A stretch of DNA of 64,000 bases, taken from the NCBI GenBank assembly GCA_002269645.1, contig NIVC01003779.1:13132-77131 (forward strand), read 5' to 3'. This document shows, one piece after another, positions 16,400-64,000 of the stretch (position 1 is the first letter of the stretch; each line of letters begins with the position of its first letter). This stretch comes from Macrostomum lignano (Eukaryota). The position numbers were made by a program, and so were the translations under genes. The notes under the pieces are model-generated. The model did no database searches. It was not told the DNA's origin and saw nothing but the letters and a program-made list of their open reading frames with translations.

Positions 16400-25286
<8,887 letters not shown>

Positions 25287-27716: not shown

Positions 27717-28631
27717 TCACAGCAGCTGGCAGGCGCGGCTCTTCTGGCCCTGCCCGGCCGGCGCGCTGAATGGCCGCTTCCTGACGCCCGGGGGGCTGCT
27801 GACTCTGCCTTGCCGCGCATCCTTCACGGGTGTCGCCGCCGTCGCAGCCGCCGCCGCCGCAGCGGAGGACGCAGCCGAGGCCGACGGCTCCGGCGACTCG
27901 ACGGCTTCGTCGATGCGGCCGAGGCCAGCGACGGCCAGCTTGCGCTTGGAGCTGGACTGCTCGGCCGCCTCGGCAGCCGCCGATTCAGCAGCGACAGACG
28001 CGACGGCGCCGCTGCCGACCACCGACAACACCTGCGCCAGCAGCTCCTCCTCCTCGTCCTCCGCAGTGTCACCAGCGTCAGCAGCAGGGACGGCCGTGGC
28101 GGCGTCCGCCAGCACGACGGTCCTCGGCTGGCTCTGGTGCTCCGGGCACAGCCAGAGGATTTTCCCTGACGGCAGGTGGCAGCGGCGTAGGCCGGCAGCG
28201 ATGCCCGGGTCCCGGCGGCGCAGGTGCTGGCGCAGCGCCGCGTGCAGCTGACGCAGGTCGGCCTCGGGCCCGGCGCGCTCAGCTGCCGCGCGCAAGTGAT
28301 CGAGCAGGCGGCCGCCGGCCACGGGGTCGGCCGCGGTGTCCAGGCCGGAGCGCCGGCTGTGCCGGAGGACCAGCGCCAGGCGGAGCAGCAGCGGCGCCAG
28401 GCCTCCCAGCAGCTGCAGGGCGGCGTCCCGGCCGAGGCGGAGCGGCAGGCCGGCGCCTGGGGCCGCATGCCAGCCGCCCTCGTGCTCGCAGAGCAGGCGG
28501 AACCGGAACTGGAAGCGGGGCTCGTCTTCGACGCCGTCGTCAGACAGCGGCGGCTCGTCCGCGGCCGCGTCGTCGGCGAAGGCGGCCACGGCGGAGAACT
28601 CGGCCTTGTCCGGGCTGTCGGCCGGGTTGTC
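27717..28631 (-). CDS. Roco gene last exon: CExxxxxH...WLCxxH domain, low-complexity tail, CaaX
   Basis: FRLLCEHEGGWH...GKILWLCPEH; ends KSRACQLL*. The 915-nt exon follows a pyrimidine-rich acceptor (CCGCAG). Confidence 0.85.
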   Translation of the reverse strand, partial: DNPADSPDKAEFSAVAAFADDAAADEPPLSDDGVEDEPRFQFRFRLLCEHEGGWHAAPGAGLPLRLGRDAALQLLGGLAPLLLRLALVLRHSRRSGLDTAADPVAGGRLLDHLRAAAERAGPEADLRQLHAALRQHLRRRDPGIAAGLRRCHLPSGKILWLCPEHQSQPRTVVLADAATAVPAADAGDTAEDEEEELLAQVLSVVGSGAVASVAAESAAAEAAEQSSSKRKLAVAGLGRIDEAVESPEPSASAASSAAAAAAATAATPVKDARQGRVSSPPGVRKRPFSAPAGQGQKSRACQLL

Positions 28632-31600
28632 CTGCGGAGTGGCCGAGACGACAGGGATGATTGGTTGGGAAATTGATGGAGAGCTTGTCAGGCAGACTAA
28701 AACGGTAGATTGGGAAATGGTAGACTGGGAAATGGTAGACTGGGAAATGGTAGACTGGGAAATGGTAGACTGGGAAATGGTAGACTGGGAAATGGTAGAC
28801 TGGAAAATGGTAGACTAGGAAATGGTAGACTGGGAAATGGTAGACTGGGAAATGGTAGACTGGGAAATGGTAGACTGGGAAATGGTAGACTGGGAAATGG
28901 TAGACTGGGAAATGGTAGACTGGGAAATGGTAGACTGGGAAATGGTAGACTGGGAAATGGTAGACTGGAAAATGGTAGACTAGGAAATGGTAGACTGGGA
29001 AATGGTAGACTGGGAAATGGTAGACTGGGAAATGGTAGACTGGGAAATGGTAGACTGGGAAATGGTAGACTGGGAAATGGTAGACTGGGAAATGGTAGAC
29101 TGGGAAATGGTAGACTGGGAAATGGTAGACTGGGAAATGGTAGACTGGGAAATGGTAGACTGGGAAATGGTAGACTGGGAAATGGCAGAGCCTACTCACA
29201 GAGTCAGTATAGATGTCGGCCACGATGAGGCAGGGAAACTGCTCGGCCGTGTCGAGAAATCCGGAGAACTGGCGGTAGACTTTGCGCTGGGCGAGCTCGA
29301 TCAGTTCCTGTAGCCATGTGTGACAGTTTTCCAATTAAGAACAGAAAAAATAACAGTTATTTATTTACTTTCTACTATAAGTAGTTTTTCGGATATCATG
29401 CCGGTTTTCAGTCAGGAGCCGCTGTGCACCCAGTGTGCATGAGTGCGTGTCTGCGTACAACATTGACGCGCTTGTGTGCTCATGTACTGTGACAGTTGTC
29501 ACCGAAGCTGCGTCAGGGCGCCCCCAGCCCTCCAGAAAATCATTATCTCTCCATCATTATCTCGTACTAGATAGGTAACCAGTCAAGAGAAAATGCATCA
29601 CCTGGAACATGGCGCCACCTCCGCCCGGACTGCTCAGGCTGCTTTTGCGCCGCTTGCGGAGACTGTCCTTGCTGTCCGGCCGTTTGATGGGGTAGTACCT
29701 CTCCAGCGTCTCCGTCACCGCGCTCAGCAGAGCGTCGTAGCAGGATTCGCTGGCAGCTTGGAAGTTCACCTTTGGATGACCGAGCGACATCATGCCGATC
29801 TGCCGGGGTTGTCGGTTCGGTAGATTAGATGCTTTTCTCACTAGATTAGATGCTTTTCTCAATGAATTACATGCTTTTAACCATAATCTTACTAGACTAG
29901 ATACCAATCTCACTAGACTAGATACCAATCTCACTAGACTAGATGCCAATCTCACTAGACTAGATACCAATCTCACTAGATAGATATCGATCTCACTAGA
30001 CTAGATACCAATCTCACTAGATAGATACCGATCTCACTAGACTAGACTAGATACCAATCTCACTGGACTCGATGCCAATCTCACTAGATAGATACCTATC
30101 TCACTAGACTAGATACCAATCTCACTAGATAGATACCGATCTCACTAGACTAGACTAGATACCAATCTCACTAGACTAGATGCCAATCTCACTAGACTCG
30201 ATGCCAATCTCACTAGATAGATACCGATCTCACTAGACTAGATACCAATCTCACTGGACTAAATACCAATCTCACTAGACTAGATACCAATCTCACTAGA
30301 CTAGATACCAATCTCACTAGATAGATACCGATCTCACTAGACTAGACTAGATACCAATCTCACTAGACTAGATGCCAATCTCACTAGACTCGATGCCAAT
30401 CTCACTAGATAGATACCTATCTCACTAGACTAGACTAGATACCAATCTCACTAGACTAGATGCCAATCTCACTAGACTCGATGCCAATCTCACTAGATAG
30501 ATACCTATCTCACTAGACTAGATACCAATCTCACTAGATAGATACCGATCTCACTAGACTAGATACCAATCTCACTAGACTAGATGCCAATCTCATTAGA
30601 CTCGATGCCAATCTCACTAGATAGATACCGATCTCACTAGACTAGATACCAATCTCACTGGACTAAATACCAATCTCACTAGACTAGATACCAATCTCAC
30701 TAGACTAGATACCAATCTCACTAGACTAGATACCAATCTCACTAGACTAGATACCAATCTCACTAGACTAGATACCAATCTCACTGGACTAAATACCAAT
30801 CTCACTAGACTAGATACCAATCTCACTAGACTAGATGCTAATCTCACTAGACTCGATGCCAATCTCACTAGACTCGATGCTAATCTCACTAGATTAGATA
30901 CCAATCTCACTAGACTAGATGCTAATCTCACTAGACTCGATGCCAATCTCACTAGACTAGATGCTAATCTCACTAGACTAGATGCTAATCTCACTAGACT
31001 AGATATCAATATCTCTAGATTAGATACCAATCTCACCAGGTTTCAAATTCTTTAGTTTATTTATCTGCGACTGCTTTCAGAATTTATAAAAAACATGAAA
31101 CAACGGATTCGAATTAAAGTGCATCGAATCTCATGTTAAGGAAAAATTTCACATAAGGGTCAGACCAAAGCCAAAAGCAGTTTGGCTGCTTGCGTGTGGG
31201 TGGCTGCCGGGCTGCGATGCGCTGAAAGAAGATTTATGCTAAGCTGGGCCGAGACCCCACTGCAGGGCCACCTGAACTGGGACTGAGTGAAAACCCCGTT
31301 TCATAGTTTCCACTGTCCTGGGAATCGATTTCCGCTTCCTCCTTTCCAGCCACTTTGTATCTTATTTCACCTTTTCCTTACTCCTTTCACTTTTCACTGG
31401 CTCCTCCCTTCTCATTTCTCATCTCACCTGTTCCTCCCTTCTCATTTCTCCTCTCACCTGTTCCTCTCACCTGTTCCTCTCACCTGTTCCTCTCACCTGT
31501 TCCTCTCACCTGTTCCTCTCACTTGTTCCCCTCACCTGTTCCTCCCTTCTCATTTCTCCTCTCACCTGTTCCCCTCACCTGTTCCTCCCTTCTCATTTCT

Positions 31601-34600
31601 CCTCTCACCTGTTCCTCTCACCTGTTCCTCCCTTCTCATTTCTCCTCTCACCTGTTCCCCTCATCTGTTCCTCCCTTCTCATTTCTCCTCTCACCTGTTC
31701 CTCCCTTCTCATTTCTCATCTCACCTGTTCCTCCCTTCTCATTTCTCCTCTCACATGTTCCTCCTCCCTTCACCTCATTTCACTCTCACCTGTTTCTACC
31801 TTCATGTCATTTCTCCTCTCAGCTAAGTTTCTCCCTTCATCTCTGCTCTCATCTCATACCTCAGTTCCCATTCCTTATCTCCCGTTCGAGTTCCAACTGC
31901 CTCCCCAGACTCCGCAGTCGCCCCCGCTCACCTCAGTGGACTCCCACAGCACGCCGGTGCCCACAACGCAGATCACCATGGGCCGGTTGAGCGTCAGGTG
32001 AGCAAAGCGATACTCCATCTGGCAGTTCTTCGATGCCACGTACTGCGATTGGGGAAAAGTTTTTGCACTTTTAGCTTCAGAAAGCATTGCGGATGATTTT
32101 GCAAGCGATATTTTTTGCGCTAATAGGGGCTGCATAAATTCAAAGTGAGCTGCAGAGATTCACAGTGAGCTGCAGAGATTCACAGTGAGCTGCAGAGATT
32201 CACAGTGATCTGCAGAGATTCACAGTGATCTGCAGAGATTCACAGTGATCTGCAGAGATTCACAGTGATCTGCAGAGATTCACAGTGAGCTGCAGAGATT
32301 CACAGTGATCTGCAGAGATTCACAGTGATCTGCAGAGATTCACAGTGATCTGCAGAGATTCACAGTGAGCTGCAGAGATTCACAATGATCTGCAGAGATT
32401 CACAGTGAGCTCTAGAGATTCACAGTGAGCTGCAAATATTTAGAGTGGAATAATACGCTCGTAATCAATAGCACGCATTCTAATGCCCAGTCGCGATCAG
32501 TTCTCACCTCATCGGAGAGGCAGGCCACCACCAGCTTGCAGGCCTTGAGTCCCTGGCAGAGGTCCTCAAACATGCCGTTCTCGCCCAGCCGTTCGATGTC
32601 AATCCAGCAGGAAAGGCCGCCGGCTTCCTCCAGGTGCTTCTTGAGTTTCCGGGGATCGCCGAACCCGATGGAGCGGCTGGTGGCCTTGCCGTGGCCTGCC
32701 TTGACCGCCTCCTGCGAGTTCGCCCAGCAGTAGCTGATGAACACGTCTGCGCGCCCGCTGACCCGCTGCGGGTGAGGTGCGCGATGGGTTGCGATGTGTG
32801 TGATGAGTTGTGTGAGGTGTGCGACGGGCTATGTGAGGTGTGATTGGTTGTTTGAGGTGCGCGATAGGTTGCGATGTGTGTGATGAGTTGTGTGAGGTGT
32901 GCGACGGGCTATGTGAGGTGTGATTGGTTGTTTGAGGTGCGCGATGGGTTGCGATGTGTGTGATGAGTTGTGTGAGGTGTGCGACGGGCTATGTGAGGTG
33001 TGATTGGTTGTTTGAGGTGCGCGATGGGTTGCGATGTGTGTGATGAGTTGTGTGAGGTGTGCGACGGGCTATGTGAGGTGTGATTGGTTGTTTGAGGTGC
33101 GCGATGGGTTGCGATGTGTGTGATGAGTTGTGTGAGGTGTGCGACGGGCTATGTGAGGTGTGATTGGTTGTTTGAGGTGCGTCATGGTTTGTTTGAGGTG
33201 TGTGTGATAGGTTTTGAGGTGTGTGTGTGTGATGGGTTTTGAGGTGTGTGTGATGGGTTTTGAGGTGTGTGATGGGTTTTGAGGTGTGTGTGATGGGTTT
33301 TGAGGTGTGTGATGGGTTTTGAGGTGTGTGTGATGGGTTTTGAGGTGTGTGATGGGTTTTGAGGTGTGTGTGATGGGTTTTGAGGTGTGTGATGGGTTTT
33401 GAGATGTGTGATGGGTTTTGAGGTGTGTGTGATGGATTTTGAGGTGTGTGATGGGTTTTGAGGTGTGTGATGGGTTTTGAGGTGTGTGGTGGGTTTTGAG
33501 GTGATGAGGTGATGGGTTGTGTGAGGTGTGTGATGGGTTGTGTGAGGTGTGTGATGGGTTGTGTGAGGTGTGTGATGAATTTTGAGAACTGTGTGAGGTA
33601 TTGTGCGAGTCACGTACTTCATTGTGTCAGGTGCATGGACTGTAAGGTGTTATTGACTGTGCCGTTTGCAATGAACGGCATGCACAAGAAGGTGACCAGG
33701 GAACTCTTACTCAGGGATTAGTTTGGATCAAGACTCAACACTTTGGCATCAGCGCACACATTATTATTCCCAAAGTCGCGAAGTCTCTCATTACCACCTA
33801 GGCTTGGGATCTCCTTCAACAAAAATGCACGGATGCGGAGCAGTGCAATTATGCCAGCAATTTCGACAGCGTCATCCGCATCTTACCGCTCGGATAAGAA
33901 TCTGATTAATTAGGCGGCAAACACCTCTCCCAGGGGGTGCACTGACCCGCAGATTTTAATAACAATTGCTAGTAAAACACTGGCTTATAAAAATAAGCCA
34001 GTAATATTTTAAAAGTACATCCAGCAGTGTTGTCGAGCTTGCTCATGCTTTTATAATTAGCTCGAAGAAAGTTTGGCAGCAAAAGCGGAATCAGAACAGG
34101 CGGTCAGGCTGACGCAAATCTCCCATGAAGTTGGCGGCTCCCTTTGACCTGAGGAGAACCGCATGATTCAATCAGACAGAAAGGACGAATTCCCTAATTT
34201 CAAGTCCTTAATCCCATCTGAGCCATAAGCCGTCCAGAGCCTTGGTACAGTGCTTCGTTCATTTTCATTAGCCTATTGTGCGTGGTGCATTATGGATGAG
34301 CTGCAAAAGCAATACGACAGTTTGATGTCAGCCTTGAGACTTCAAACAGCTTTAAAGGATTTAAAACTGGATTTTGAGCCGCTGCCAAATCCGACAGATT
34401 AAAGTGCCCAGCTGTTGTCTGGGAGCCCGGCCATTGGCTGTGAAGGACAAGCGAGCCGGGGGCGGATTGGCGGAGGCTGAGGCTTCGCTGAAGTGGATGA
34501 CTAGAAAAATCCATCAGGGCGGAGAGCCGAGAAGGCCAACCAGCGGACTACTCAGGTTCGATTCTCAGCTCCCAGTTCAGTTCAGTGAGAATCAGCTCAG

Positions 34601-52600: not shown

Positions 52601-53423
52601 GTCCGCCCTCGCGGCCATGCCCGACTTCGCTTTCTTCTGGGGCAACCTGTCGTCCAGCACATATGCCCTGTGCATGGCGGCCAGCCAGCAGCGCCACAGG
52701 CCGATGGTGATGAACCGCATTCCCTGGGTGACGTTGATCAGCAACAAAAGCCAGCTGGCCGTCACCTGCATGGCGCACAAGCACTCCAGCACCAGCCTCT
52801 GCCTGCAGAGCCACATACCGGCTACATTCATCGTTGATCGAGACACAGACCGGAGCTCTCTGCCGGCGCTGGCCCGGCGCCTTCTGGCCATGCACCCGGT
52901 GTGGATAGTGAAGCCGCACAACTACGCAAAGGGCGAAGGAATTCAGTTGGCATTTCGCGAGGACGGCGAGGCAGCGATGCTGCGCAGCCTGTCCAGCGAC
53001 CGCTGGGGCATCGGCAAGGTGGTGCAGTGCTACATGACCGACCCCATGCTGCTCAGCGGCAAGAAGTTCGACTTGCGCGTCTTCCTACTCCTAGTAACCA
53101 CCGGCTCAGGGCTGCTGGCGTTCTACCACACCGGCTACGTGCGGCTGGCGCTGAATGACTTTCTGGTCTGCGACAAGCAGCGCCTGGACACGCACCTCAC
53201 CAACCAGGCAGTGCAGGCCAAACAGTCTGGCTACGAGGCTAACAAGGAGGACACCATCTGGACGGTGCAGCAGATGAACAGCTACCTCAACCAGCTGCCG
53301 AGCAGCGAATTCGGCAACGACTGGACGATCAGGGAGCTGCATCCGAAGGTCAAGTTGCTCGTGGCCGCCCTGGTTGAGGCGCTGGCGCAGCGGGTGCAGA
53401 AGGACCGGCGCAACAGCAGCGGC

Positions 53424-53466
<43 letters not shown>

Positions 53467-56400: not shown

Positions 56401-59400
56401 AGCATCGCTCAGCTGGTCTGGGACTGCACTAGCATCGCCAAAATGGTCTGGGACTGCACTAGCATCCGCTAAAATGGTCTGGGACTGCACTAGCATCCGC
56501 CAAAATGGTCTGGGACTGCACTAGCATCGCTCAGATGGTCTGGGACTGCACTAGCATCCGCCAAAATGGTCTGGGACTGCACTAGCATCGCTCAGCTGGT
56601 CTGGGACTGCACTAGCATCGCCAAAATGGTCTGGGACTGCACTAGCATCCGCTAAAATGGTCTGGGACTGCACTAGCATCCGCCAAAATGGTCTGGGACT
56701 GCACTAGCATCGCTCAGATGGTCTGGGACTGCACTAGCATCCGCCAAAATGGTCTGGGACTGCACTAGCATCGCTCAGCTGGTCTGGGACTGCACTAGCA
56801 TCGCCAAAATGGTCTGGGACTGCACTAGCATCCGCCAAAATGGTCTGGGACTGCACTAGCATCCGCCAAAATGGTCTGGGACTGCACTAGCATCCGCCAA
56901 AATGGTCTGGGACTGCACTAGCATCCGCCAAAATGGTCTGGGACTGCACTAGCATCCGCCAAAATGGTCTGGGACTGCACTAGCATCCGCCAAAATGGTC
57001 TGGGACTGCACTAGCATCCGCCAAAATGGTCTGGGACTGCACTAGCATCCGCCAAAATGGTCTGGGACTGCACTAGCATCCGCCAAAATGGTCTGGGACC
57101 GTACTAGCATCGCCAAAATGGTCTGGGACTGCACTAGCATCCGCCAAAATGGTCTGGGACTGCACTAGCATCCGCCAAAATGGTCTGGGACCGTACTAGC
57201 ATCGCCAAAATGGTCTGGGACTGCACTACTCTGGGAGTATATCGCCACTCAAATAAACTACAAAGACGATTGCCCCCCGACACGCCTGAACAAAATTCAG
57301 GAATACAGTCACTTCTATCAGAGAATACAAAATATTTTCGATTCCGTAAGGCTTAAAAGTATCGATTTGAGTGTCTCTATCCAGGTTTTTGTAAGTTACA
57401 TCTTTACAACTATTAGAAGCAGTTGATCAGAGAATAAGATGAAATGACGACTAACATCGTAGTGGTCGTTGTAGCAGCAGCCGGTGATTCTGAGCACCAC
57501 ATCCGTGATCGGCTCGTCAGCGGGCAGACTGTCGTCCTTAAGTTGCCTGACAAACTCCCAGTCGTGAAGAGCGCTTTTCTTCAAGCTAAACTTCAGCTGA
57601 CGATCGCGAAGCGTCAGGCCAATGATGGCGTCCTCACTGGCGTCGTCATGCAGGGCCAACCAGACGGCCTGCTCGCAGCCGGGACGGTGCAGGAAGCTGA
57701 CCTCCAGGTGGTCGAAGCTGGCGTGCCGCATCGGCAGGCGAGACCGGAGCAGCGTCTCCAGCGTCACCGGCTGATCCGAAGACTTTTCTTCGTCGAATCT
57801 GGGCCGGCTGGCCGCGACCAGCAGGTTGCCCTGCAAAGAGGCTGGCAGGCCAGACACCACGTCGAATGCCTTGGATGCGAAGGTCGGGTAGACGCGACAG
57901 AAGTGGCGCCACATCTTCGCCACGGTTTTCTTCCACAAGAAGCAGTGCTCGCAGGAGAAGGAGTTCTGGTATCGGTCTATCCAGTCGTGCTGCGGAAACG
58001 GCGCCAGACGGTACCACATGAAGCGCCACTCGGCGTCGGTCATCTGCTTGGCGCGGCACTTGCTGCAGCTCTTGTGGTTGGCGAGTGTCCGGCCGACCTC
58101 CGGTACCGAAAAGGTGTTCTTTAGGCCCGAGTGAAAGCATTCACCGCGGCAGTAGACTCGCAGCTGCGGAGTTGATCCGGTTGGGTCGTGGTCAATTGGG
58201 TTGCGGCCAGTGAGGTTGTGGTCAATTGGGTTGCGGCCAGTGAGGTTGTGGTCAGTTAGGTTGCGGCCATTGAGGTTGTGGTCAATTGGGTTGCGGCCAG
58301 TGAGGTTGTGGTCAGTTGGGTTGTTGTTAGGTATTTGGTTATGATCGGATGGGTTGTGTTCGGTTGGATTGTAGACATTTGGGTTGCGGTAAGTTGCTGG
58401 GTTGCCGTCAGTTGCTGGGTTGGTGCCAGTTAAGTTGTGGTTAGTACTGAGACCACTAATCTACACAACAAACGGCAAACCATTTCTCCTACCGTCAATT
58501 ACCTTCGATGGCCCCTCACTCAGATCACCCTTCACCAAACCTTGCCTCACATCTAAATACGCGTTGCACGTCATTACACCATTCATTGCAAAATTCTAAG
58601 CACCTTAAAGCCTGTATGCACGCATAATTATGATGAAGCAATAATTAATGCTCTATAAAAACGCACCTTGTGATGCAGGTAGGGATACTCGGCAGCCACG
58701 GACTCCAAGGTGGTCAGCAGGTCGCTGAAGCAGGACCAGATGTACTCTTTGAGCGAGTCGCTGTTGGCCCCTGGCACAGTTTCATTCATGCGGCACTCGA
58801 AGTCAATGGAAGACGAAGCCAGGGCTGCGGTGCGGTGCGGATTTTAGGAGTCGTTTTGCAAAGGGAAACACTACTCAGAAGCAGAAACTACAAAGCTTAT
58901 CCCTCCCGTTTAGTGTAGCTGTAGCTGGGTCACGGAATAACAGTGAAGGAAAAAGAAAGATTGAGGCGGCTCATTTATGCATTCCCAATTTACGCTCTTG
59001 TGGAATAGCTCCATCAATGGACGAACTCTTGGCTTTAACTAATGTTAAATTTACATTAAATACTGAATGCATCTGGACTGCCTAGGAACGAAATTATCTC
59101 ATTCATTTTGGATATCAATTGTCGAAGCAAATGAGATTTCAAACGTGACTTAATAATCATTATTTTAATTATGCCCAGGAAGGAGATGAAAGCGCGAATT
59201 ATGGCTGCGGTAACTTGCGATAAGAAGAGATAGGCATGCATTCAGCTTCCCGCAGAATTTTACATCTTTAAAGAGAGAATCGGGACTTTTTGCTATTCAG
59301 CACTGTGGTGGAGTCGCTTTGGGCGCTGCCGTGGATCAAGCGGAGGACCCTTCAGACCCTTCAGCGCAGGCATACTATTTTTTATTAAAGGCAGGGGCTG

Positions 59401-62400
59401 TGGGCACCCTGGCGCACTTTAAGCGACATTGTCACACAACCGGCGAGAGGCATTGCTGCCCATTCCGCCGACTCCCCTGAGCAGGCACACAAGCGCGCGG
59501 ATGCGTACGCAGTGATACGCACAGGCACACAATCACACAGGAGTGTACAGCGGCCCTAACTTTATTTATCGTTAGGCATGTACACTTCACTGTGCCTTGG
59601 GGGTTGTCCATCAAGGACGTTATTTACACGAGCAGAGCCAAGCCGAGATTCCAATTTAGCCCCAAATTAATGCGACTGCACTTGGAATCGAGCCTGGCAC
59701 ATCAGAGCGCTTCGCTGGACCACCGGGCTACGGCCCCTGCGCTCGCAGGCACACACTCGGCCCTAACCTTTTCGTTGTCAAACATGTACACTCTCTGTGC
59801 CCTTGGGGTCGGGGACGGATGGCCATGGGGCGAGCTTCGCAGCACGAATCAGATTTTTGCGCACGAGTCCCAAATTAATGTGGCCGCGCACAGAATCGAC
59901 TTTGAGTTGAACGCATTTGCCGCTGAGCTGCTCTGCCTGCTACACCCAGGGCTCACTCGAATGCAGGCCGTAGGTGCAGAGGATGTCGCAGACTCCGCGC
60001 TGCACGTGCATCCCGGTGCGCCACACCTGCACCACGCCGGTGGCCACGGGACTCTGCATGCAGGCGGTGGCGAACCTCGCCAGCAGGTTGGCGGGAAAGC
60101 CGACGCGGAACTTCACGGAGAACAGCAGGCAAATATCGCCGGGTGGGAAGTCCTCGGACTGCAGGTCCGGCATGTACATGCTCTTGTGGTGCCGCATGGA
60201 AAGCTTCTCTTCCGTGGCGCTGAATCGGATGGACACGCGGGGCTCCAGGCGCGACCAGAGGAAGTAGCGCCGGCTCGAGGCCTCCGCTGCGTGCTGAAGG
60301 CGGGCGACCCGGCCGGCCTGGGTGGACTCGCGAACCGTGTCCGTGTGGCCGAGCAGGCCGAAGCGAAGGAGGATGCGGCGCAAGGTCTCAGCCTGTGGAA
60401 GTTTGGTTTTTGCATCGCTAAGCATTAAGTTATTACTAATATGATGGACCCTCGATACCTTAGAAACGTTATGGTCAACGATTTAGTTCATCAGATTGCT
60501 ATTTGAAGCCATCTGTGCGCACGTCGCAAACATTAACCAGATGGCTTGTCCGACATCACCAGACACATGAAAACAACTTCATAAACAATAGAAAAACACG
60601 TGCTAAGTCGTTCTAAAGCAAATAAACAGAAAAGCATTTCCAGAGACATACTTCATTTCCGTGGTGGCAGCTTTGAGGAATCACTAGTCAATAGTCATAC
60701 TGTCGCCTTTTGAGCTCTTTCAGGAATTAGTATTCATAGCTCACAAAATGCATGACTCACCTCATCCTCGGTGGCTCCGGCAGCCAGCAGTTCAGCGCGC
60801 AGCTCCGCCTCGCTGAGGGCCGGCACATTGCGGCCGAGCGTCCAGCAGCTGTCGCCGTTGCGGTAGTCGGCGATGGCATCGAGATGGGCTAGACAGGACA
60901 TGAACCAGGCCAGGTCCAGCACCACTGGCTGGTTCGTCCCTTCCGGGAAGAAAAGCAGCTTGCCCTGCGATTAAATTTTTAAGAACTGTGATTTTCTTAT
61001 CGAGTTTTACTACTCGTAGTAACAAGTACATAGCAGCAAATGAACCCTTTGGAAAGAATTTAAAATTATATACAGATTGCTACTGAATCTATCAAAATAT
61101 ATGTTATTTTTCTATCCTTCTATTCTTTGGGCAGACCAAGGCGCCGCAGTCCAGCAATCCCGCACCATTTGATGCAGCTTCTTCAGCAGCGCCACAGTCC
61201 GCCGGCTCTCTCGCTGCGGCAGGCCAAGCTCAGACATCAGCACATTCAGTGGGAAGATTCGCCGCCACGACTGCTGCTGCTGCTGTTGCGACTGCTGAGC
61301 AGCCAGAAAGTCGCTCAGCCGATCAGCCAGTTGCCAGTTGGACTCGGTGAGGCGACGCGTCTCCCACAGCTGCAGCGACTCGGCGGCTGTTCTGGCCAGT
61401 TGGGTCACGTGACGCGCCAGACGATTACTCTGAGGTAGACAGGTGAGGAGGCAAGTGGAAATCGCAAATTGCACATCAAGGCTACAGTTCACCCGCAGCA
61501 GTAAGGAGGGGCAAGCAGTGACGCTCATTCTGACACCTAAGCCTCTAAATTCTACATGCAAGTGAAATAAGGAACGAACTTTGTTATGTTCGACTGCTGA
61601 AACGAATTACTGTCTGTGATTCGTTTCTCATTTTAGTTTCGTACTGCTCGTTAGTAATAAATCCCTAGAATAGATTTCTCATTCGCTATGGAGTAATTCT
61701 CAATAGTTCCCGCCAGTCTAAACGTCACACAATGTACTCTTACCTCCTTTTCGATTCCTGCTGACTCAGCCACGGCTGCTCCAGCCGGATTCAGCTCCCG
61801 CTCGTGCTCCTTCACCAACAGCAGGTACTTGATCACCGCGTACACGTAGAGCCACATGCAGTTGATAATGTTAAACCACCGTTTCACCTGCGAGATGAGC
61901 GCTGTTTGTAGGAATTATAAATTAAATACGCAGAAGAAAGAATCAACTCTTACAGTTTCTCCAAAGGTCTCCCACTCTGGAACAAGGGCGGTCAGGTCCG
62001 CCAGCAGCTTGGCGTGTCTGCCCGAGAGAGACTCCGTCTGAAAGCGGATTTTTTGGGTTTGACTTAAGACGAATCAGGAAATTTTGGATTAGTTTACAAA
62101 GTGTCTCACAATGTAATTCGTGTCCTTGAAGCGCAACAGAAAGCGCGTCTCCGACACAAGGTTCTTTGCCGTTGGCCAGGCGTCGTCTTCCGTGAATGGA
62201 ATGTCGAATATGAGCATAACGCACTTCATTGTGGTCACTACGACGGGTGGAGGAGCCGAAAGGGAGCGCAACTGAAAGAACAGAATGAGCATTTACAACT
62301 GTTGATAATCTGTGCATTCAGATTCAGATTGCATGTCAGATTCAGCTAACACTGACCTCCATGAAGTCCGCCTTGGTGCACCGGTCCAACGCGTCAATGG

Positions 62401-63944
62401 CAAACATCTACAAACAAGTAAGCAGTTGTTCTTTGTTTTACAGTACTTGTACCCGTACTGTACTTGAAGTAGTCTATTCCTAAAGCAAATGGCGAACAAG
62501 CAACTTACGTAATCGTGCTCCGCCCAATACTGCACTTGAGCTTGTACGTTGGAGTCCACCTTTACTTCCCGGAGTGTAGTCTCGAATACCTGAGAATGTT
62601 TGAATTCAAATTCCGGTTTAAAAATCTGGCTCTTTCTGAGCCTAGTGTCTTTTTGAATACAAGTAGTTTTCATTTCACACCACCAGTCTTCATTGAAGCC
62701 TTCGACTGGAACGGCAACCAAAGTGATGGGAAAGTGGGTACATCCGCGCACTGAATCGACTGAACGTAACGCCACTGGTGCGGAAAGTCCTTGTCGTAGC
62801 AACTGAAGTTATGATTGAAGCAGCGTATTTCGTGTCTGAGAGATTATCTGATAGGCTGCTCAGAGCAAAAACGAAACTATTATTCTTACCTATTTAAGTG
62901 CTCCTTCTCCAAGTGCTCCTTCATGTTGTCTACCTGATCCCTGAGCATGTTTTCCAGTCGGATTTCAGCGAGGCAACATTCTCAACCCCTTTCTGGCTGC
63001 TCACCGTAGCGACTAAGAAGCAGCGGCGCTTCGAACACCTGCGACGGCGAGGCGCGTGACGATTAATGAAGGTGAAATACCTACGAGCGCACATTAAATG
63101 GACAGATCTGTCAGACTCACCGCTCCACTCGAACTGCGTCAATCATTCGCATAATTTCTAGCTGGGGATTCTCTGTGCGCTCCGCATCCACTACCAGCAC
63201 GAAACCGGCTGTGTTGGACATGAACAGCGAGCTGTACACTGAGCAAGGGTTTGGCGAAAAGTAATTGGGGACTAAGTACGATTCTAAACATTTGAAAATC
63301 GTCCTCATCTGCGATGCCTATGGTCAAGCACAGGCTAAACTATTTTAAACAAATTCATAGATTTAACAAGGTTTTGAATTAGGCAAGACCTATTGATCTC
63401 TTTAAGGCACTGTGCCCTGCGTGCTATACGCTTTAATATTTTATTGCAAATATATATTAATAACTTTCGATCATTGCACTTATTTAGAGAGGCTTGAAGC
63501 CTACGTAGTAAGAGCGTCGGACTCAAGACTGAAAGGTCGGGGGTTGGATTCTCGACCCACTCGAACAATTTGTGTCCTTGAGCAGGACACTTAACTCTGC
63601 ATTGCTTCAGTTCACCCAGCTGTAAAATGGGTGCCAGCATTAGCTGGGGTAACTGAGGGGGTGTGTATGGCGACCCCCCCCAGTCCGTGCTTGCTCGTGG
63701 GATCGACACACGCAAGGCTATCAAAACACGCTTGAATTCACTTCACCCAGTTTAACACTCCTTTCACTTGACCAGTGCACTTACTAGGTCTGCGCGCATC
63801 TCGAACACAGTCAGGTCCAGGTCGCCAACAGTGGCTGAGAGCGCTCGAAAAGTCGGTGGGGCTGCACAGACGACGTTACCGCCGATTTTGACGACGACGG
63901 CCTCGACTTGGAGCTGGAAGATGGCTGAGCTCCGCCCACCGCGC
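27717..63944 (-). CDS. Giant double-Roco protein: degenerate ROC+dynein MTBD, COR, linker/Tudor-like, LRR/EF-hand, ROC, COR, TIR, TIR, CaaX (about 2850 aa in window, 5' incomplete)
   Basis: Exons 5'->3': ~63785-63944, 63121-63238, 62934-63038, 62742-62802, 62357-62407, 62110-62271, 61954-62037, 61744-61887, 61166-61429, 60761-60964, 59957-60392, 58667-58824, 57456-58163, 57230-57285, 55785-55914, 55271-55490, 55087-55178, 54873-54914, 54435-54675, 51174-51304, 51011-51076, 50802-50942, 49105-50250, 48481-48646, 47307-47712, 42970-43076, 42814-42892, 42242-42388, 40248-40606, 40004-40151, 39815-39932, 38081-38270, 36920-37253, 32508-32765, 31932-32042, 29602-29799, 29200-29307, 27717-28631. 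All GT-AG and phase-compatible except the first junction and a 1-nt deficit in 49105-50250. Single-gene continuity is inferred from splice logic only. Confidence 0.7.
28706..29185. repeat. 15-bp minisatellite (GTAGACTGGGAAATG), about 32 copies, intronic
   Basis: Near-perfect units filling intron 28632-29199. Confidence 0.95.
29602..32765 (-). CDS. Roco gene TIR domain 2 (3 exons), catalytic-type
   Basis: DVFISYCW (box 1), LSCWIDIE (box 2), CKLVVACLSDE|YVASKNCQMEYRFA, RPMVICVVG. Confidence 0.88.
29815..31035. repeat. About 21-bp minisatellite (CTAGACTAGATACCAATCTCA), intronic
   Basis: About 1.2 kb of tandem variant units. Confidence 0.95.
31400..31800. repeat. Pyrimidine-rich minisatellite (TCTCACCTGTTCC / CTCCCTTCTCATTTC), intronic
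   Basis: Directly visible. Confidence 0.85.
32145..32432. repeat. 20-bp minisatellite (CACAGTGATCTGCAGAGATT), about 14 copies, intronic
   Basis: Tandem units in intron 32043-32507. Confidence 0.95.
32770..33575. repeat. GT-rich compound minisatellite (about 78-bp units, then TTTTGAGGTGTGTGATGGG), intronic
   Basis: Tandem units that start right at the acceptor of exon 32508-32765. Confidence 0.9.
34611..35882 (+). CDS. Intronless class A peptide-receptor-like GPCR (FMRFamide-receptor-like clade), about 423 aa, nested antisense in Roco intron 32766-36919
   Basis: Seven hydrophobic segments, N-terminal NGS/NDS sequons, TM3 RNWSLVMIAGSRC (DRY replaced), TM4 VCAPRLFE, TM6 FIICELP, TM7 DSFTNFIIYSSTSNTFR. 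The frame is open from 34374, but ATG 34611 is the likelier start. Confidence 0.9.
   Translation: MLAYVAVNGSCLNDSGSSEGPAGGAANVYLYIACVLSYLNALTNGFSLIVFILDKKNVIMGRLLLLLSLSETVLNIGFAVNLTVMLTVMADAGRQAFDSPLRPQMITCAFFLSFAIANAFIMVRNWSLVMIAGSRCEVVSNPFSTRRGQLFSHRRSQACYALTLILSLLVCAPRLFEFTWTICEYPAENNSTETTVYSLTTATHHILDKNPSYRHYKTLLVFPLQTIAPIFLISGLSLVIIFILRRRRLLQQNSGGSAGSGSGRGGGGASGSGSRSQDAATKTVMILMFSFIICELPTFLFFILNQTIFASMRGFNQIRMHTTFLANILLSADSFTNFIIYSSTSNTFRETVRRMLHLPDRRQGRSNNYNYYNNHLQNNNYSMLSREANALRRAEAAAAATAAPSHIEDAALAPLKWHPGGAD
36920..38270 (-). CDS. Roco gene TIR domain 1 (2 exons), degenerate
   Basis: DVTLIFCCA...IQAGLETAGLSV...SGCCLCLISNEFVLSDTCAQYLSLA...KKPLVLGLVGSG..W parallels TIR2 but lacks the Glu after S..C. 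Confidence 0.75.
37676..38097. repeat. 47-bp minisatellite, about 9 copies, containing the exon end and 5' splice site
   Basis: Each unit (minus strand) reads CTGCCGGCTTATCTGT|GTGAGTATAG..., identical to the true donor at 38081/38080. Confidence 0.9.
38612..39510. repeat. 56-bp minisatellite, about 16 copies, intronic
   Basis: Unit CACTGTGGACTGAGTGTCTGACGGTTGTCCAGCCCCAATGCTGAGTATCTGTGTG; source of three long repeat ORFs. Confidence 0.95.
39815..43076 (-). CDS. Roco gene COR domain 2 (6 exons)
   Basis: GEHVPEAWLNFEKAI, AVQFLHDMGSLQHF, VIINPQWLVDVM, VVPCLLP, YTFDYLPAGLFNRAQVRL, IWQRGSLL, VPCIDC. Confidence 0.9.
40682..40935 (+). mobile_element. tRNA-derived CORE-type SINE, family 1 (intronic)
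   Basis: A-box TAGCCTAGAGG, B-box GGTTCGATTCCC, CORE-like body and the same 3' tail as the copy at 4847. Confidence 0.85.
41498..42150. repeat. 30-bp minisatellite (TGTGCTCAAGGCTCAACAGCTACTCGACTT), about 21 copies, intronic
   Basis: Tandem units. Confidence 0.95.
42410..42790. repeat. 12-bp minisatellite (TTAATCCTGCTG), intronic
   Basis: Fills intron 42389-42813. Confidence 0.95.
44520..45000. repeat. Degenerate CT-rich repeat (CTCTCTCTAATCCATCTAAT), intronic
   Basis: Recurrent degenerate units are visible. Confidence 0.75.
46828..47190. repeat. 23-bp minisatellite (CAGTACATTCTGACCTCCCAGTA), intronic
   Basis: About 15 tandem units. Confidence 0.95.
47307..48646 (-). CDS. Roco gene intact ROC GTPase (2 exons)
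   Basis: G1 KLMFVGLGGAGKTS, G2 ITDGIDI, G3 VWDFAGQ, YYNTHQFFLTARAVYLLVW, G4 VVGTHCDK, G5 FSVSS. Confidence 0.95.
47775..48250. repeat. 35-bp minisatellite (GTTTGAAGCAGTGAAGTGACGATTTGACTCTGGGG), intronic
   Basis: About 13 tandem units in the intron that splits the ROC domain. Confidence 0.95.
49105..50250 (-). CDS. Roco gene LRR exon with Gly-rich insert, EF-hand and a 1-nt frameshift
   Basis: LxxLxLxxN repeats (LTNLELSRC, LINLQLHEN, LKFLNLSYN, LRTLVLDNN) and EF-loop DVNNDKILQAQE. Exon length is 1146 nt where flanking phases need 3n+1. Confidence 0.85.
52128..53759 (+). CDS. TTLL10: Intronless tubulin-tyrosine-ligase-like enzyme, closest in motif pattern to TTLL10 polyglycylase; nested antisense in Roco intron 51305-54434
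   Basis: WIVKPHNYAKGEGI, VVQCYMTDPMLLSGKKFDLRVFLL, GYVRL, HLTNQAVQAK...KEDTIW, FSLLGLDVLVD...PWLIEANADP. 543 aa with QP and polyQ tracts. TTL-family assignment is solid; the TTLL10 subfamily call is tentative. Confidence 0.8.
54435..57285 (-). CDS. Roco gene linker exons including a Tudor/Agenet-like barrel
   Basis: Six phase-compatible exons. 55271-55490 encodes FHPGMLLLFRTGVGQTWLPGVVTSIRDGLLEV...LFAVDSDDIRP, a Tudor/SH3-like pattern. Confidence 0.6.
56020..57229. repeat. 30/31-bp minisatellite (AATGGTCTGGGACTGCACTAGCATCCGCCAA), about 39 copies, intronic
   Basis: Tandem units that begin exactly at the predicted donor of exon 57230-57285. Confidence 0.95.
57456..61429 (-). CDS. Roco gene COR domain 1 (divergent) followed by a CxxC-containing region
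   Basis: LKKLHQM|GKLLFF...VVLDLAWFM, YFLWSRL, FRVGFPANLLARF, VWRTGM, SVAAEYPYL...LRVYCRGEC. CSKC and CEHC follow. Confidence 0.75.
58190..58320. repeat. 30-bp repeat x4 (GTGGTCAATTGGGTTGCGGCCAGTGAGGTT), intronic near acceptor
   Basis: Directly visible. Confidence 0.85.
59394..59900 (-). mobile_element. tRNA-headed SINE, family 2 (one long copy plus an adjacent partial copy), intronic
   Basis: Matches 11387-11712. Minus-strand A-box TAGCCCGGTGG and B-box-like GGCTCGATTCC at about 59685-59730; second partial body at 59740-59900. Confidence 0.75.
61744..62407 (-). CDS. Dynein-heavy-chain-type microtubule-binding domain (4 exons) within the Roco gene
   Basis: IDALDRCTKADFMELRSLSAPPPVV..MKCVMLIF...WPTAKNLVSETRFLLRF...IINCMWLYVYAVIKY matches the recalled DHC stalk-tip pattern AL..L.K.DI.ELKS...PP.AV...W..AKK.L...FL..L...GLC.WV.A..KY. 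Confidence 0.8.
62742..63944 (-). CDS. Degenerate ROC-like domain (G3-G4 region), 5' incomplete
   Basis: DLDLTVFEMRAD (G3 position), YSSLFMSNTAGFVLVVD (parallels HQFFLTARAVYLLVW), RRCFLVAT (G4 strand). The junction between 63785 and 63238 is not phase-resolved. Confidence 0.55.
63499..63686 (+). mobile_element. tRNA-derived CORE-type SINE, family 1 (3'-truncated, intronic)
   Basis: Same head and CORE-like body as the copies at 4847 and 40682; the tail diverges after CCCCCAGTCC. Confidence 0.8.
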
Positions 63945-64000
63945 CTGTAGAGCTAGGCGCGCCAATGCTGACGGTTACGGCCGGGTCGCAGATGATGGCC

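What the first reader, a model, noticed from the sequence alone, without database searches (positions are those of the whole stretch)
27717..63944. A single giant 'double Roco' gene: pseudo-ROC/MTBD-COR...LRR-ROC-COR-TIR-TIR-CaaX
Seen: what look like three separate genes in the ORF track join into one frame through consecutive GT-AG, phase-matched junctions. These include 57456->57285 (GTTAGT donor before the 57396 stop) and 54435->51304 (GTAAGT donor skipping the TTLL gene). Known: Roco proteins (LRRK2, MFHAS1, DAPK1) carry one ROC-COR unit. I know of no characterised protein with two ROC-COR units, a dynein MTBD, tandem TIRs and a prenylation motif. Inference: a GTPase-gated TIR effector tethered to microtubules at one end and to membrane at the other, possibly a ciliary or axonal surveillance or self-destruction module analogous to SARM1.
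Basis: partly seen in the sequence, partly recalled or inferred. Interest (0 to 1): 0.92.

Follow-up and report, generated by a model that had tools for sequence, protein, structure and literature searches.

The report
Flatworm Roco-TIR gene with dynein microtubule-binding domain
This is one very large flatworm (Macrostomum lignano) gene, already predicted in public databases, for a GTPase-switched TIR (NAD-cleaving type) protein of a family widespread in molluscs, annelids and relatives; this version also carries a real dynein-type microtubule-binding domain and a lipid-anchor motif, a combination nobody appears to have described.

Summary
The window is Macrostomum lignano contig C3779 of the Mlig_3_7 assembly. 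Public models P0036 and P0002 map at about 100% identity through GT-AG junctions, including 54435->51304 and 50802->50250.

Three corrections:
- Donor 57456 joins acceptor 55949, not 57285.
- The gene starts about 1.9 kb beyond the window, on overlapping contig C3833.
- As assembled, a missing G at 49520 breaks the frame. One paralogous copy reads through.

The C-terminal half is solid: LRR, EF-hand-like loop, LRR, Roc, COR-A, COR-B, TIR1, TIR2, a conserved C-terminal domain and CaaX. The catalytic-type Glu is in TIR2 only. The CaaX box recurs in about 20 homologues from several phyla.

In the N-terminal half:
- The dynein microtubule-binding domain is confirmed (E 3.7e-9 to solved DNAH6; 6.8e-22 to a dynein-only profile).
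- A second COR-like domain has several weak, mutually consistent lines of support.
- The "pseudo-ROC" is not supported by any test.

LRR-Roc-COR-TIR proteins are already noted in the literature, so this is a new variant of a known kind. The likely mechanism is inferred only: a GTP-gated NADase held between microtubules and membrane.

The parts
27717..63999 (-). In-window part of one gene: 38 exons, about 2,910 codons. Two further 5' exons with the start codon lie off the window on overlapping contig C3833.
   Evidence: Exon maps of P0036, P0002, P0001 and P0004; exon table with splice dinucleotides; 5' exons on C3833.
62683..63999 (-). The segment is G-domain-like only in its strand/helix pattern; the P-loop, DxxG and NKxD motifs are all absent. 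The window sequence here carries contig-end indels.
   Evidence: Only weak collinear matches (family HMM score -2.3; hhalign E 0.23). No GTPase hit in Pfam or PDB. Indels relative to C3833.
61795..62401 (-). Dynein-type microtubule-binding domain (MTBD), spread over four exons.
   Evidence: phmmer against solved DNAH6, E 3.7e-9, aligned to its residues 2780-2927. Library-wide hits are dynein stalk/MTBD proteins. A dynein-only HMM gives E 6.8e-22. Foldseek hits dynein stalk/MTBD structures.
61268..61794 (-). Helical segment after the MTBD, resembling stalk coiled-coil CC2, ending in a poly-Q run.
   Evidence: The alignment to DNAH6 extends into CC2. The AF2 model shows long helices, at low pLDDT.
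60342..61267 (-). First (N-terminal) COR-A-like domain.
   Evidence: Pfam COR-A E 0.012, 16 bits, below the 35.3-bit cut-off. Family HMM and hhalign align LHQMGKLLFF...VVLDLAWF to LHDMGSLQHF...VIINPQWL. The Paralvinella orthologue has two Pfam COR-A stretches.
58152..60272 (-). First COR-B-like domain.
   Evidence: hhalign aligns it collinearly: FSVKFRVGFPANLLARF to YTFDYLPAGLFNR, and VWRTG to IWQRG. Foldseek top hits of the low-confidence model are LRRK2, LRRK1 and the CtRoco COR domain.
57927..58151 (-). Cys-rich segment (CxxEC ... CxKC ... CxHC) directly after the COR-B-like domain. It parallels the PCxDC...C..H.C motif after the canonical COR-B.
   Evidence: Read from the sequence and from the alignment with P0045 and P0005.
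55950..57455 (-). Intron between donor 57456 (GTTAGT) and acceptor 55949.
55090..55490 (-). MBT-like / SH3-like barrel, in the position where mollusc homologues carry a Pfam MBT repeat. Low confidence.
   Evidence: hhalign to the homologues' MBT region, E 0.017, matching the D.RP.G and W..YL..P.P..F motifs. Pfam MBT in P0013 and P0024.
51305..54434 (-). Intron 54435->51304, containing an intronless + strand TTL-family gene.
49660..50049 (-). LRR block 1.
   Evidence: Pfam LRR_14, LRR_8 and LRR_4.
49520..49659 (-). Gly-rich linker. A single G is missing from a G-run at 49520, which shifts the frame in this copy.
49355..49390 (-). EF-hand-like loop DVNNDKILQAQE (D-x-N-x-D ... E spacing).
   Evidence: Pfam EF-hand_6 E 0.0045, below the cut-off. 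An EF-hand is reported in the Aplysia relative LOC101845043.
48615..49261 (-). LRR block 2.
   Evidence: Pfam.
43062..48521 (-). Roc GTPase domain across three exons. Motifs are intact: GLGGAGKTS, DFAGQ, THCD.
   Evidence: Pfam Roc E 1.7e-21. The P-loop is restored by splice 48481->47712.
40484..43010 (-). Canonical COR-A. The exon set is corrected relative to P0002: 42892-42814 and 42388-42242 are included.
   Evidence: Pfam COR-A E 3.1e-31 over profile positions 1-143.
40013..40396 (-). Canonical COR-B.
   Evidence: Pfam COR-B E 5.1e-27.
36941..38181 (-). TIR1, which lacks the catalytic-type Glu (SDTCAQYLSLA).
   Evidence: Pfam TIR_2, two stretches; family alignment.
29692..32750 (-). TIR2, with the invariant Glu in SKNCQMEYRFA (32001-32033).
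   Evidence: Pfam TIR_2. Glu invariant in 16 of 16 aligned sequences (E96). PDB profile top hit is the Cat1 TIR, E 3e-7. AF2 mean pLDDT 77.7, with Foldseek top hits RPP1 and SARM1 TIR.
28110..29607 (-). Conserved C-terminal domain of unknown family. Residues C273, E274, W279, H280, W385, C387 and H390 are invariant; C376 is about 90% conserved.
   Evidence: Predicted confidently (pLDDT 80-93). No Pfam hit and no PDB sequence hit.
27717..27731 (-). CaaX box CQLL followed by the stop codon.
   Evidence: The ...K-S-[KR]-A-C-x-x-x C-terminus recurs in about 20 homologues.

Best explanation
The window holds most of one Macrostomum lignano gene, about 38 kb and about 40 exons, encoding roughly 3,080 residues once the single-base frame break is mended.

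The protein belongs to the spiralian 'TIR-Roco' family: LRR, EF-hand-like loop, LRR, Roc, COR-A, COR-B, TIR1, TIR2, a conserved C-terminal domain, CaaX.

Ahead of that core lies a long N-terminal module:
- Cys-type LRRs, encoded off the window.
- A genuine dynein-type MTBD with stalk remnants.
- A second, divergent COR-like domain followed by a Cys-rich motif.
- An MBT-like barrel.

Shown here: the gene structure, the domain identities, an intact Roc motif set, a catalytic-type Glu in TIR2 only, a conserved CaaX, and homology of the MTBD to axonemal dynein.

Inferred mechanism: the Roc-COR unit acts as a GTP-controlled conformational or dimerisation switch, as in other Roco proteins. Inputs would come from the LRRs and perhaps Ca2+. 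The switch would bring TIR domains together so that TIR2, with the non-catalytic TIR1 as partner, cleaves NAD+ by depletion or by cADPR-type signalling. The prenylated C-terminus would anchor the effector end to membrane, and the MTBD would dock the other end on microtubules. The second COR-like domain could pair with the canonical COR within the same chain.

The second COR-like domain seems ancestral to the long forms of the family. The MTBD is a flatworm-lineage insertion.
For: One gene:
- P0036 comes from the RNA-seq-based Mlig_3_7 annotation (PMC5730564). It spans every junction from 62592 to the LRR exon.
- No AATAAA/ATTAAA signal follows the 57396 stop.
- Independent genomes encode N-module plus LRR-Roc in one protein: Cichlidogyrus KAL3313543.1 = P0045 and Paralvinella P0005.

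Core domains: Pfam E 1e-19 to 1e-31.

MTBD.

Second COR-like domain. Upstream COR-like segments also occur in Aplysia P0013 (i-E 2.2e-4), P0024 and P0031.

TIR2:
- The Glu is invariant.
- It aligns to the Glu-containing motif of the NADase Cat1.
- The closest folds are RPP1 and SARM1 TIR.
- The 2026 preprint reports glutamate-dependent cADPR production by diverse animal TIRs. Its architecture-figure legend lists Roc, COR and LRR among the domain abbreviations.

CaaX conservation.
Against: - As assembled, the frame breaks at 49520. The annotated product P0036 ends at 49489, before Roc. Three of four genomic copies share this break.
- I saw no transcript reads directly.
- The N-module is almost without relatives: 19 hits in 1.8 billion representative proteins. 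Its AF2 model is poor (mean pLDDT 42), so the COR-like fold match rests on an unreliable model.
- No test supports a G-domain in residues 165-370.
- The MTBD is degenerate in the monogenean and absent from mollusc and annelid relatives.
- GTPase activity, NADase activity, microtubule binding and prenylation are all untested.
Confidence: 0.62

Rival explanations
1. This particular copy is a disabled or truncated allele or paralogue. The 1-nt deletion at 49520 would be real, so the locus makes only the roughly 1,700-residue N-terminal protein (LRR, MTBD, COR-like, MBT-like, LRR), as annotated in P0036. The Roc-COR-TIR part would be untranslated here, and intact function would rest with another copy such as C3923.
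For: - The frameshift lies in the well-covered interior of two overlapping contigs and also in the 97%-identical copy C2189.
- The annotation stops at 49489.
- The DV1 line genome carries about 180 Mb of duplicated blocks at 95% identity or more, so redundant copies could decay.
Against: - The site is a G homopolymer in sequence of about 85% GC, in a PacBio/Canu assembly. Homopolymer under-calling with poor Illumina polishing is expected there.
- The ML2-derived model P0001 shows a different pair of indels in the same stretch, which points to an error-prone region.
- Downstream exons show no other stops or frameshifts over 1,352 codons and all splice sites are intact.
Confidence: 0.3
2. There are two neighbouring genes, an N-terminal MTBD/COR-like gene and a separate LRR-Roc-COR-TIR gene. 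Prediction or transcript-assembly programs would have merged them, and the short form would start from a promoter in the TTL-containing intron.
For: - Public model P0001 starts at an ATG at 51317, just upstream of acceptor 51304.
- Many family members are short forms of 1,200-1,450 residues without an N-module.
- A nested opposite-strand gene sits in the 3.1-kb intron.
Against: - The exons between 55949 and 50802 are coding, phase-matched, and conserved with P0005 (residues 622-908) and P0045 (865-1028), where they also connect N-module to LRR-Roc.
- P0036 bridges the junctions.
- The ORF ending at 57396 has a consensus-like donor at 57456 and no poly(A) signal after it.
- The 'MNATG' start of P0001 is intron sequence next to the acceptor.
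Confidence: 0.1
3. The TIR domains act as non-enzymatic adaptor or scaffold modules of MyD88/TLR type, recruiting other TIR proteins. The protein would then be a signalling platform rather than an NADase.
For: - TIR1 lacks the Glu.
- MyD88 and TLR TIRs are also among the sequence and fold hits.
- The Aplysia paper files relatives with TLRs and MyD88-like proteins.
Against: - The TIR2 Glu is invariant across phyla.
- The best profile hit is the NADase Cat1, and the best fold hits are RPP1 and SARM1.
- The 2026 preprint finds glutamate-dependent cADPR production in many non-TLR animal TIRs.
Confidence: 0.2

Closest known systems
Spiralian LRR/MBT-Roc-COR-TIR proteins (e.g. Aplysia californica LOC101848126 = P0013, called a 'ROCO-domain TLR' in PMC9334734)
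   Same: Same core order: LRR, Roc, COR-A, COR-B, TIR, TIR, C-terminal domain, CaaX. The core is 31-40% identical with E-values down to 1e-289. An upstream weak COR-like segment and an MBT or MBT-like barrel lie ahead of the LRRs.
   Different: The flatworm protein has a dynein MTBD inserted ahead of the N-terminal COR-like domain, and its MBT is degenerate. The mollusc proteins have no MTBD. None has been studied experimentally as a whole protein.
LRRK2 / LRRK1 / MFHAS1 and bacterial CtRoco (Roco family)
   Same: A Roc GTPase immediately followed by COR-A/COR-B and preceded by LRRs, with intact G motifs. The COR region of LRRK2, LRRK1 and CtRoco is the top fold match for the N-terminal module. 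LRRK2 also associates with microtubules (my own knowledge).
   Different: There is no kinase or WD40 domain. The effector is a TIR pair. A second COR-like domain sits in the same chain. Microtubule contact would come from a borrowed dynein MTBD rather than from Roc-COR/kinase filaments. The 2019 Roco review lists three topology groups, none with TIR.
SARM1 / C. elegans TIR-1
   Same: The TIR2 fold matches the SARM1 TIR (TM about 0.6-0.73 normalised to the target, prob 1.0). The catalytic-type Glu is present. The idea of a regulated NAD+-cleaving TIR in a large autoinhibited protein is shared.
   Different: No ARM or SAM domains appear in the Pfam scans. Regulation would be by a GTPase switch rather than by NMN/NAD+ binding to an ARM domain. 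There are tandem TIRs and a CaaX anchor in place of a mitochondrial targeting sequence.
Plant TNL immune receptors (RPP1, ROQ1)
   Same: An NTPase switch plus LRR sensor gating a TIR NADase. The RPP1 TIR is the top fold hit.
   Different: The switch here is a Ras-like Roc-COR rather than an NB-ARC STAND ATPase. The TIRs are C-terminal rather than N-terminal.
Axonemal dynein heavy chain 6 (DNAH6) microtubule-binding domain
   Same: About 30% identity over roughly 150 residues, including ...ELRS.S.PP..V...M..V......WPTAK.L......F... and the start of CC2.
   Different: There is no AAA+ motor (no AAA Pfam hit), and only short remnants of the stalk coiled coil. The domain is embedded in a Roco protein.

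Membership tests
Roco proteins | Roc (Ras-of-complex) G domain with nucleotide-binding motifs | tested here: met
   Pfam Roc E 1.7e-21 over profile positions 1-119. The sequence shows GLGGAGKTS, DFAGQ and THCD.
Roco proteins | COR domain (COR-A plus COR-B) immediately C-terminal to Roc | tested here: met
   Pfam COR-A E 3.1e-31 and COR-B E 5.1e-27, contiguous with Roc.
Second Roc-COR unit ('double Roco') | A second COR domain in the same chain | tested here: inconclusive
   Pfam COR-A E 0.012, below the cut-off. hhalign E 0.02-0.04, collinear. Foldseek top hits are LRRK2, LRRK1 and CtRoco COR, but from a model with mean pLDDT 42. The Paralvinella orthologue has two Pfam COR-A stretches.
Second Roc-COR unit ('double Roco') | A second G domain, active or degenerate, directly N-terminal to that COR | tested here: not met
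   No Roc, Ras or other GTPase hit for residues 160-375 in Pfam (E up to 1) or PDB sequences (E up to 10). Only near-zero-score alignments exist.
Enzymatic (NADase) TIR domains | TIR fold | tested here: met
   Pfam TIR_2 E 2.6e-19, two stretches. AF2 pLDDT 77.7, with Foldseek prob 1.0 to RPP1 and SARM1.
Enzymatic (NADase) TIR domains | Conserved catalytic glutamate in the C..E motif | tested here: met
   In TIR2 the Glu is invariant in 16 of 16 sequences and aligns with the Cat1 motif. TIR1 lacks it across the family.
Enzymatic (NADase) TIR domains | NAD+ cleavage activity | not testable with these tools
   Needs an enzyme assay. The related preprint data are for other proteins.
SARM1 family | ARM-SAM-SAM-TIR architecture | tested here: not met
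   No ARM or SAM Pfam hits on the composite protein.
Dynein heavy chain | Microtubule-binding domain homologous to the stalk tip | tested here: met
Dynein heavy chain | AAA+ ring motor and a full antiparallel coiled-coil stalk | tested here: not met
   No AAA or Dynein_heavy Pfam hits. Only about 30 residues before the MTBD and about 60-80 helical residues after it.
CaaX-prenylated proteins | C-terminal Cys-aliphatic-aliphatic-X at the true C-terminus | tested here: met
   CQLL followed by the stop at 27717. The equivalent C-termini in about 20 homologues are CVIL, CVIM, CSVM, CRLM, CVLL and similar.
CaaX-prenylated proteins | Actual prenylation and membrane association | not testable with these tools
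   Needs labelling or localisation experiments.
Toll-like receptors (label used for relatives in PMC9334734) | Signal peptide, extracellular LRR ectodomain and a transmembrane helix before the TIR | not tested
   No dedicated predictor was run. The domain order (cytosolic GTPase between LRR and TIR, then a CaaX tail) argues against a TLR topology.

The most novel reading that the evidence does not exclude
A single polypeptide that is a natural intramolecular 'pseudo-dimer' Roco. A degenerate LRR / G-like / COR copy would pair with the active LRR-Roc-COR copy. It would carry a dynein MTBD captured between the G-like segment and COR, and would gate a SARM1/plant-type TIR NADase anchored to membrane by prenylation. 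In effect it would be a microtubule-to-membrane tethered, GTP-controlled NAD+-cleaving switch. It would also be the first described use of the dynein MTBD outside a dynein motor in an animal protein.
Probability: 0.3. Interest if true: 0.85.

Novelty: new variant of a known kind. Interest (0 to 1): 0.62.

Why it matters
Roco GTPases are studied intensively because of LRRK2, including its association with microtubules. TIR NADases are central to axon degeneration (SARM1) and to plant and bacterial immunity.

This family joins the two directly: Roc-COR upstream of a catalytic-type TIR. It adds a conserved prenyl anchor, and in flatworms a borrowed dynein MTBD.

If the inferred mechanism holds, it offers a natural system for three questions:
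- How a Roc-COR switch controls an effector other than a kinase.
- How Roco proteins are placed on microtubules.
- Whether animal TIR enzymes outside SARM1 are gated by GTPases.

M. lignano has transgenesis and a genome-guided, RNA-seq-based transcriptome annotation (PMC5730564). RNAi is, to my knowledge, also in routine use in this species. The questions are therefore testable.

The practical annotation outcome is smaller. The gene model already exists publicly. This work corrects its COR-A exons and its C-terminus (CaaX), and flags one assembly frameshift.

Tried and rejected
That path reaches a stop at about 57229 and then enters a 31-bp array.
- P0004's C-terminal extension past 27804 into 25.2-21.6 kb: rejected. 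It uses a weak GTCAGC donor and GAG acceptor, produces repeat-derived peptide, and bypasses the conserved CaaX end.
- P0002's skip 49846->49471 and its COR-A exon choice: rejected as devices to avoid the frameshift or to drop exons. The exon set 42892-42814 plus 42388-42242 restores the full Pfam COR-A.
- A short intron as the explanation of the 49.5-kb frame change: not adopted. Copy C3923 is in frame without one, and P0036 reads straight through.
- Word-based homologue search with the N-module: found only M. lignano proteins.
- Iterative HMM search among family members: recruited only Paralvinella P0005.
- AF2 of the N-module with a 3-sequence alignment: mean pLDDT 42, so its Foldseek hits count as weak support only.
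- phmmer of the TIR1-TIR2 region against PDB: no hits. A profile was needed.
- Pseudo-ROC against PDB: nothing relevant.
- Literature searches for a non-dynein MTBD, a double Roco, or an M. lignano TIR-Roc protein: nothing specific.
Full report
**Source and context**

The window is eukaryotic. The best protein hits are Macrostomum lignano. The genome tool places the window at G000:C3779:13132-77131, so it runs to the end of a 77,131-bp contig of a 764-Mb assembly in 5,269 contigs. That matches Mlig_3_7, a Canu/PacBio assembly polished with Pilon. Its annotation is a genome-guided RNA-seq transcriptome. The sequenced DV1 line carries about 180 Mb of duplicated blocks at 95% identity or more (PMC5730564).

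**Gene structure**

Pfam scans of single stop-to-stop ORFs on the minus strand gave:
- LRRs at 49.0-50.25 kb
- Roc at 47.3-47.7 kb
- COR-A and COR-B at 42.2-42.4 and 40.0-40.7 kb
- TIR_2 at 36.8-37.3 and 32.4-32.8 kb

The ORFs at 57-63 kb gave nothing individually.

A provisional spliced product was used for a homologue search. It found four public M. lignano models:
- P0002, 2,414 aa, UniRef
- P0036, 1,371 aa, NCBI BOX15_Mlig030103g1, partial
- P0001
- P0004

These map back to the window at about 100% identity. P0036 and P0002 both run from the upstream "gene" into the LRR exon. From 62407 down to the stop at 27717, every junction is GT-AG.

I corrected two weaknesses of the public models:
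- Exons 42892-42814 and 42388-42242 restore a complete COR-A.
- The true C-terminus is the ORF ending ...KSRACQLL* at 27720, not P0004's extension.

**Limits of the observation**

The gene starts outside the window. Contig C3833 overlaps window 47690-64000 at 99.75% identity. The 41 differences are mostly single-base indels. They cluster at the two contig ends (47.7-48.8 kb and 62.6-64.0 kb), with only three in the 13.8 kb between. The frameshifts seen in the window's 5' exons relative to P0002 are therefore contig-end errors. On C3833 the first eleven exons map perfectly, all junctions are GT-AG, and the Met lies at C3833:18226.

A different problem sits in the interior. In the GC-rich Gly linker of the 50250-49105 exon, the window has GGG where copy C3923 has GGGG. 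The frame shifts at 49520 and P0036 terminates at 49489. C3833 and the 97%-identical copy C2189 share the shift, while C3923 reads straight through. P0001, derived from another assembly, shows a different pair of indels in the same stretch. I consider homopolymer under-calling more likely than a real lesion, but cannot exclude the lesion.

**C-terminal half**

On the composite protein, Pfam gives:

| Family | E-value |
|---|---|
| LRR_14 | 2.9e-16 |
| LRR_8 | 2.1e-13 |
| Roc | 1.7e-21 |
| COR-A | 3.1e-31 |
| COR-B | 5.1e-27 |
| TIR_2 (two stretches) | 2.6e-19 |

The Roc motifs are intact: GLGGAGKTS after splice 48481->47712, plus DFAGQ and THCD.

An EF-hand-like loop, DVNNDKILQAQE, lies between the LRR blocks. 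It is sub-threshold. An EF-hand is reported in an Aplysia relative.

A family alignment of the region after COR and alignment A2 show:
- TIR1 lacks the Glu of the C..E motif throughout the family.
- TIR2 keeps it invariantly (SKNCQMEYRFA).
- A roughly 210-residue domain follows TIR2, with invariant C273, E274, W279, H280, W385, C387 and H390. No Pfam or PDB sequence match was found for it.
- The C-terminus is a conserved ...K-S-K/R-A-C-a-a-X box.

The CaaX box recurs in homologues from nemerteans, annelids, molluscs, brachiopods and a hemichordate.

The A2 profile's best solved relative is the NADase Cat1 TIR (E 3e-7), aligned across the Glu motif. An AF2 model of TIR2 plus the C-terminal domain has mean pLDDT 77.7. 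Its best Foldseek matches are the RPP1 and SARM1 TIR domains (prob 1.0).

**N-terminal half**

Pfam on the 1,486-residue N-terminal composite gave only two sub-threshold hits: COR-A (E 0.012, residues 606-659) and the dynein stalk family MT (E 0.11, residues 393-455).

An exhaustive phmmer search of 1.84 billion representative proteins with P0036 residues 1-1117 found only 19 hits. They fall into three groups:
- An orthologue-like protein, P0045. This is Cichlidogyrus casuarinus KAL3313543.1, from a monogenean flatworm. It is 33% identical and its own C-terminus carries LRRs and Roc.
- Fragments.
- A set of hits to query residues 28-220 that are dynein heavy-chain stalk/MTBD proteins (Pfam MT E 1e-35 to 1e-61).

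Against solved structures the segment hits axonemal dynein heavy chain 6 at its MTBD, residues 2780-2927, with E 3.7e-9. The alignment is convincing. For example, ADFMELRSLSAPPPVVVTTMKCVMLIF aligns to [27 protein letters not shown], and AWPTAKNLVSETRFLLRF aligns to DWPTAKQLLGDSNFLRRL. An HMM built only from dynein sequences scores the flatworm segment at 69.5 bits, E 6.8e-22. It finds nothing significant in mollusc or annelid relatives and only degenerate traces in P0045. The MTBD claim is therefore confirmed, and the domain is a flatworm-lineage insertion.

**Second COR-like domain and "pseudo-ROC"**

Evidence for a second COR-like domain:
- An HMM of the family's Roc-COR region aligns residues 610-659 to the COR-A core. 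It aligns residues 245-296 to Roc strands, with scores near zero.
- With a three-species alignment (M. lignano, Cichlidogyrus, Paralvinella), hhalign aligns collinearly the COR-A core, the COR-B "F.YLPAGLFNR" and "IW.RG" motifs, and the Cys motif that follows COR-B. E is 0.02-0.04.
- The same HMM finds upstream COR-like segments in Aplysia P0013 (i-E 2.2e-4), P0024 and P0031.
- Pfam reports two COR-A stretches in Paralvinella P0005.
- An AF2 model of MTBD plus the COR-like region is poor (mean pLDDT 42). Even so, its top Foldseek hits are exclusively LRRK2, LRRK1, the CtRoco COR domain, and dynein stalk/MTBD structures.

Taken together, a second COR-like domain is likely, and it seems ancestral to the long forms of the family.

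Residues 165-370, the "pseudo-ROC", gave no GTPase hit in Pfam or PDB. That claim rests only on a plausible strand/helix pattern with all G motifs missing. I leave it unverified.

The region 55490-55090 resembles the end of an MBT repeat (hhalign E 0.017). It lies where mollusc homologues have a Pfam MBT domain.

**Is it one protein?**

Evidence for one protein:
- The RNA-seq-derived P0036 bridges all junctions from the MTBD exons to the LRR exon.
- The connecting exons (55949-50802) are conserved in P0005 and P0045, which also join the N-module to LRR-Roc.
- There is no poly(A) signal after the 57396 stop.

Evidence against:
- The 49520 frame break.
- The P0001 model, which starts at 51317, although that ATG is intron sequence beside the acceptor.

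I did not see reads directly.

**Mechanism**

This part is inferred. By analogy with Roco proteins, Roc-COR is a GTP-dependent conformational or dimerisation switch, with the LRRs, and perhaps the EF-hand-like loop, as inputs. By analogy with SARM1, plant TNLs and Cat1, bringing TIR domains together activates NAD+ cleavage at the Glu site. Here TIR2 would be catalytic and TIR1 a structural partner. The CaaX box (X = L suggests geranylgeranylation) would anchor the effector end to membrane, and the MTBD would dock the N-terminal end on microtubules. The second COR-like domain might substitute for a dimer partner.

A 2026 preprint shows glutamate-dependent cADPR production by diverse non-TLR animal TIRs. 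Its architecture-figure legend lists Roc, COR and LRR among the domain abbreviations. This makes catalysis plausible but does not test this protein.

**Comparison and novelty**

The fused model is already in UniProt and NCBI as an uncharacterised protein. MBT/LRR-Roc-COR-TIR proteins are noted in the Aplysia immunome study, where P0013 = LOC101848126. The 2019 Roco review does not list TIR-containing or double-unit Rocos.

My searches found no description of any of these features:
- a dynein MTBD in a Roco or TIR protein
- the conserved CaaX
- the catalytic/non-catalytic TIR pair
- the conserved C-terminal domain

I therefore rate this a new variant of a known kind. The gene model is correct in outline and the MTBD is the most surprising feature. 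The function is untested.

Noticed in passing
window 52128-53759 (+): An intronless 543-aa ORF of the tubulin-tyrosine-ligase family (Pfam TTL E 2.7e-35) lies on the opposite strand, inside the 3.1-kb intron 54435->51304. A tubulin-modifying enzyme gene is thus nested in a gene whose product carries a microtubule-binding domain. This may be coincidence.
   Followed up: partly
window 34497-35882 (+): An intronless 461-aa rhodopsin-type GPCR ORF (Pfam 7tm_1 E 4.3e-12, Srw E 1.6e-14) is nested on the opposite strand, in the 4.15-kb intron between the TIR1 and TIR2 exons.
   Followed up: partly
window 47690-64000, also G000:C3833:1-16316: Contigs C3779 and C3833 are unmerged overlaps of the same locus, 99.75% identical. 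Almost all differences are 1-nt indels within about 1.3 kb of either contig end. Contig ends in this assembly are unreliable for reading frames.
   Followed up: yes
proteins P0049, P0050, P0051, P0053, P0054 (protist transcriptome and metagenome sources): Proteins of 460-1,200 aa whose only Pfam family is the dynein stalk MT, matched in 3-4 separate stretches and without AAA modules. They look like tandem dynein-type MTBDs in non-motor proteins of microbial eukaryotes, or else like fragmented dynein predictions.
   Followed up: partly
window 28110-29607 (-) and homologues: A roughly 210-residue domain after TIR2 is conserved from flatworm to hemichordate, with invariant C, E, W, H ... W, C, H residues (LCEHE.GWH ... 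C.LPSGK.LWLC..H). AF2 predicts it confidently. It has no Pfam or PDB sequence match, and it may bind zinc. A similar ...LCPRH ending occurs in P0037, a 962-aa LRR-Roc-COR protein from a JGI source with no TIR hit.
   Followed up: partly
window introns: 27002-27651, 28700-29189, 29885-31036, 32129-33596, 37673-38100, 38628-39505, 41505-42132, 42407-42792, 46831-47197, 47775-48226, 56013-57228: Many introns of this gene, and its 3' flank, hold a long minisatellite array (periods 12-80 bp, 9-54 copies, 83-97% matches). These arrays create the long spurious ORFs seen in all frames.
   Followed up: partly
window 21643-25215 (-): Public model P0004 (UniRef A0A1I8IUS2, 'TIR domain-containing protein') splices past the conserved CaaX stop into repeat-derived sequence downstream. 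That extension looks like an annotation artefact.
   Followed up: partly
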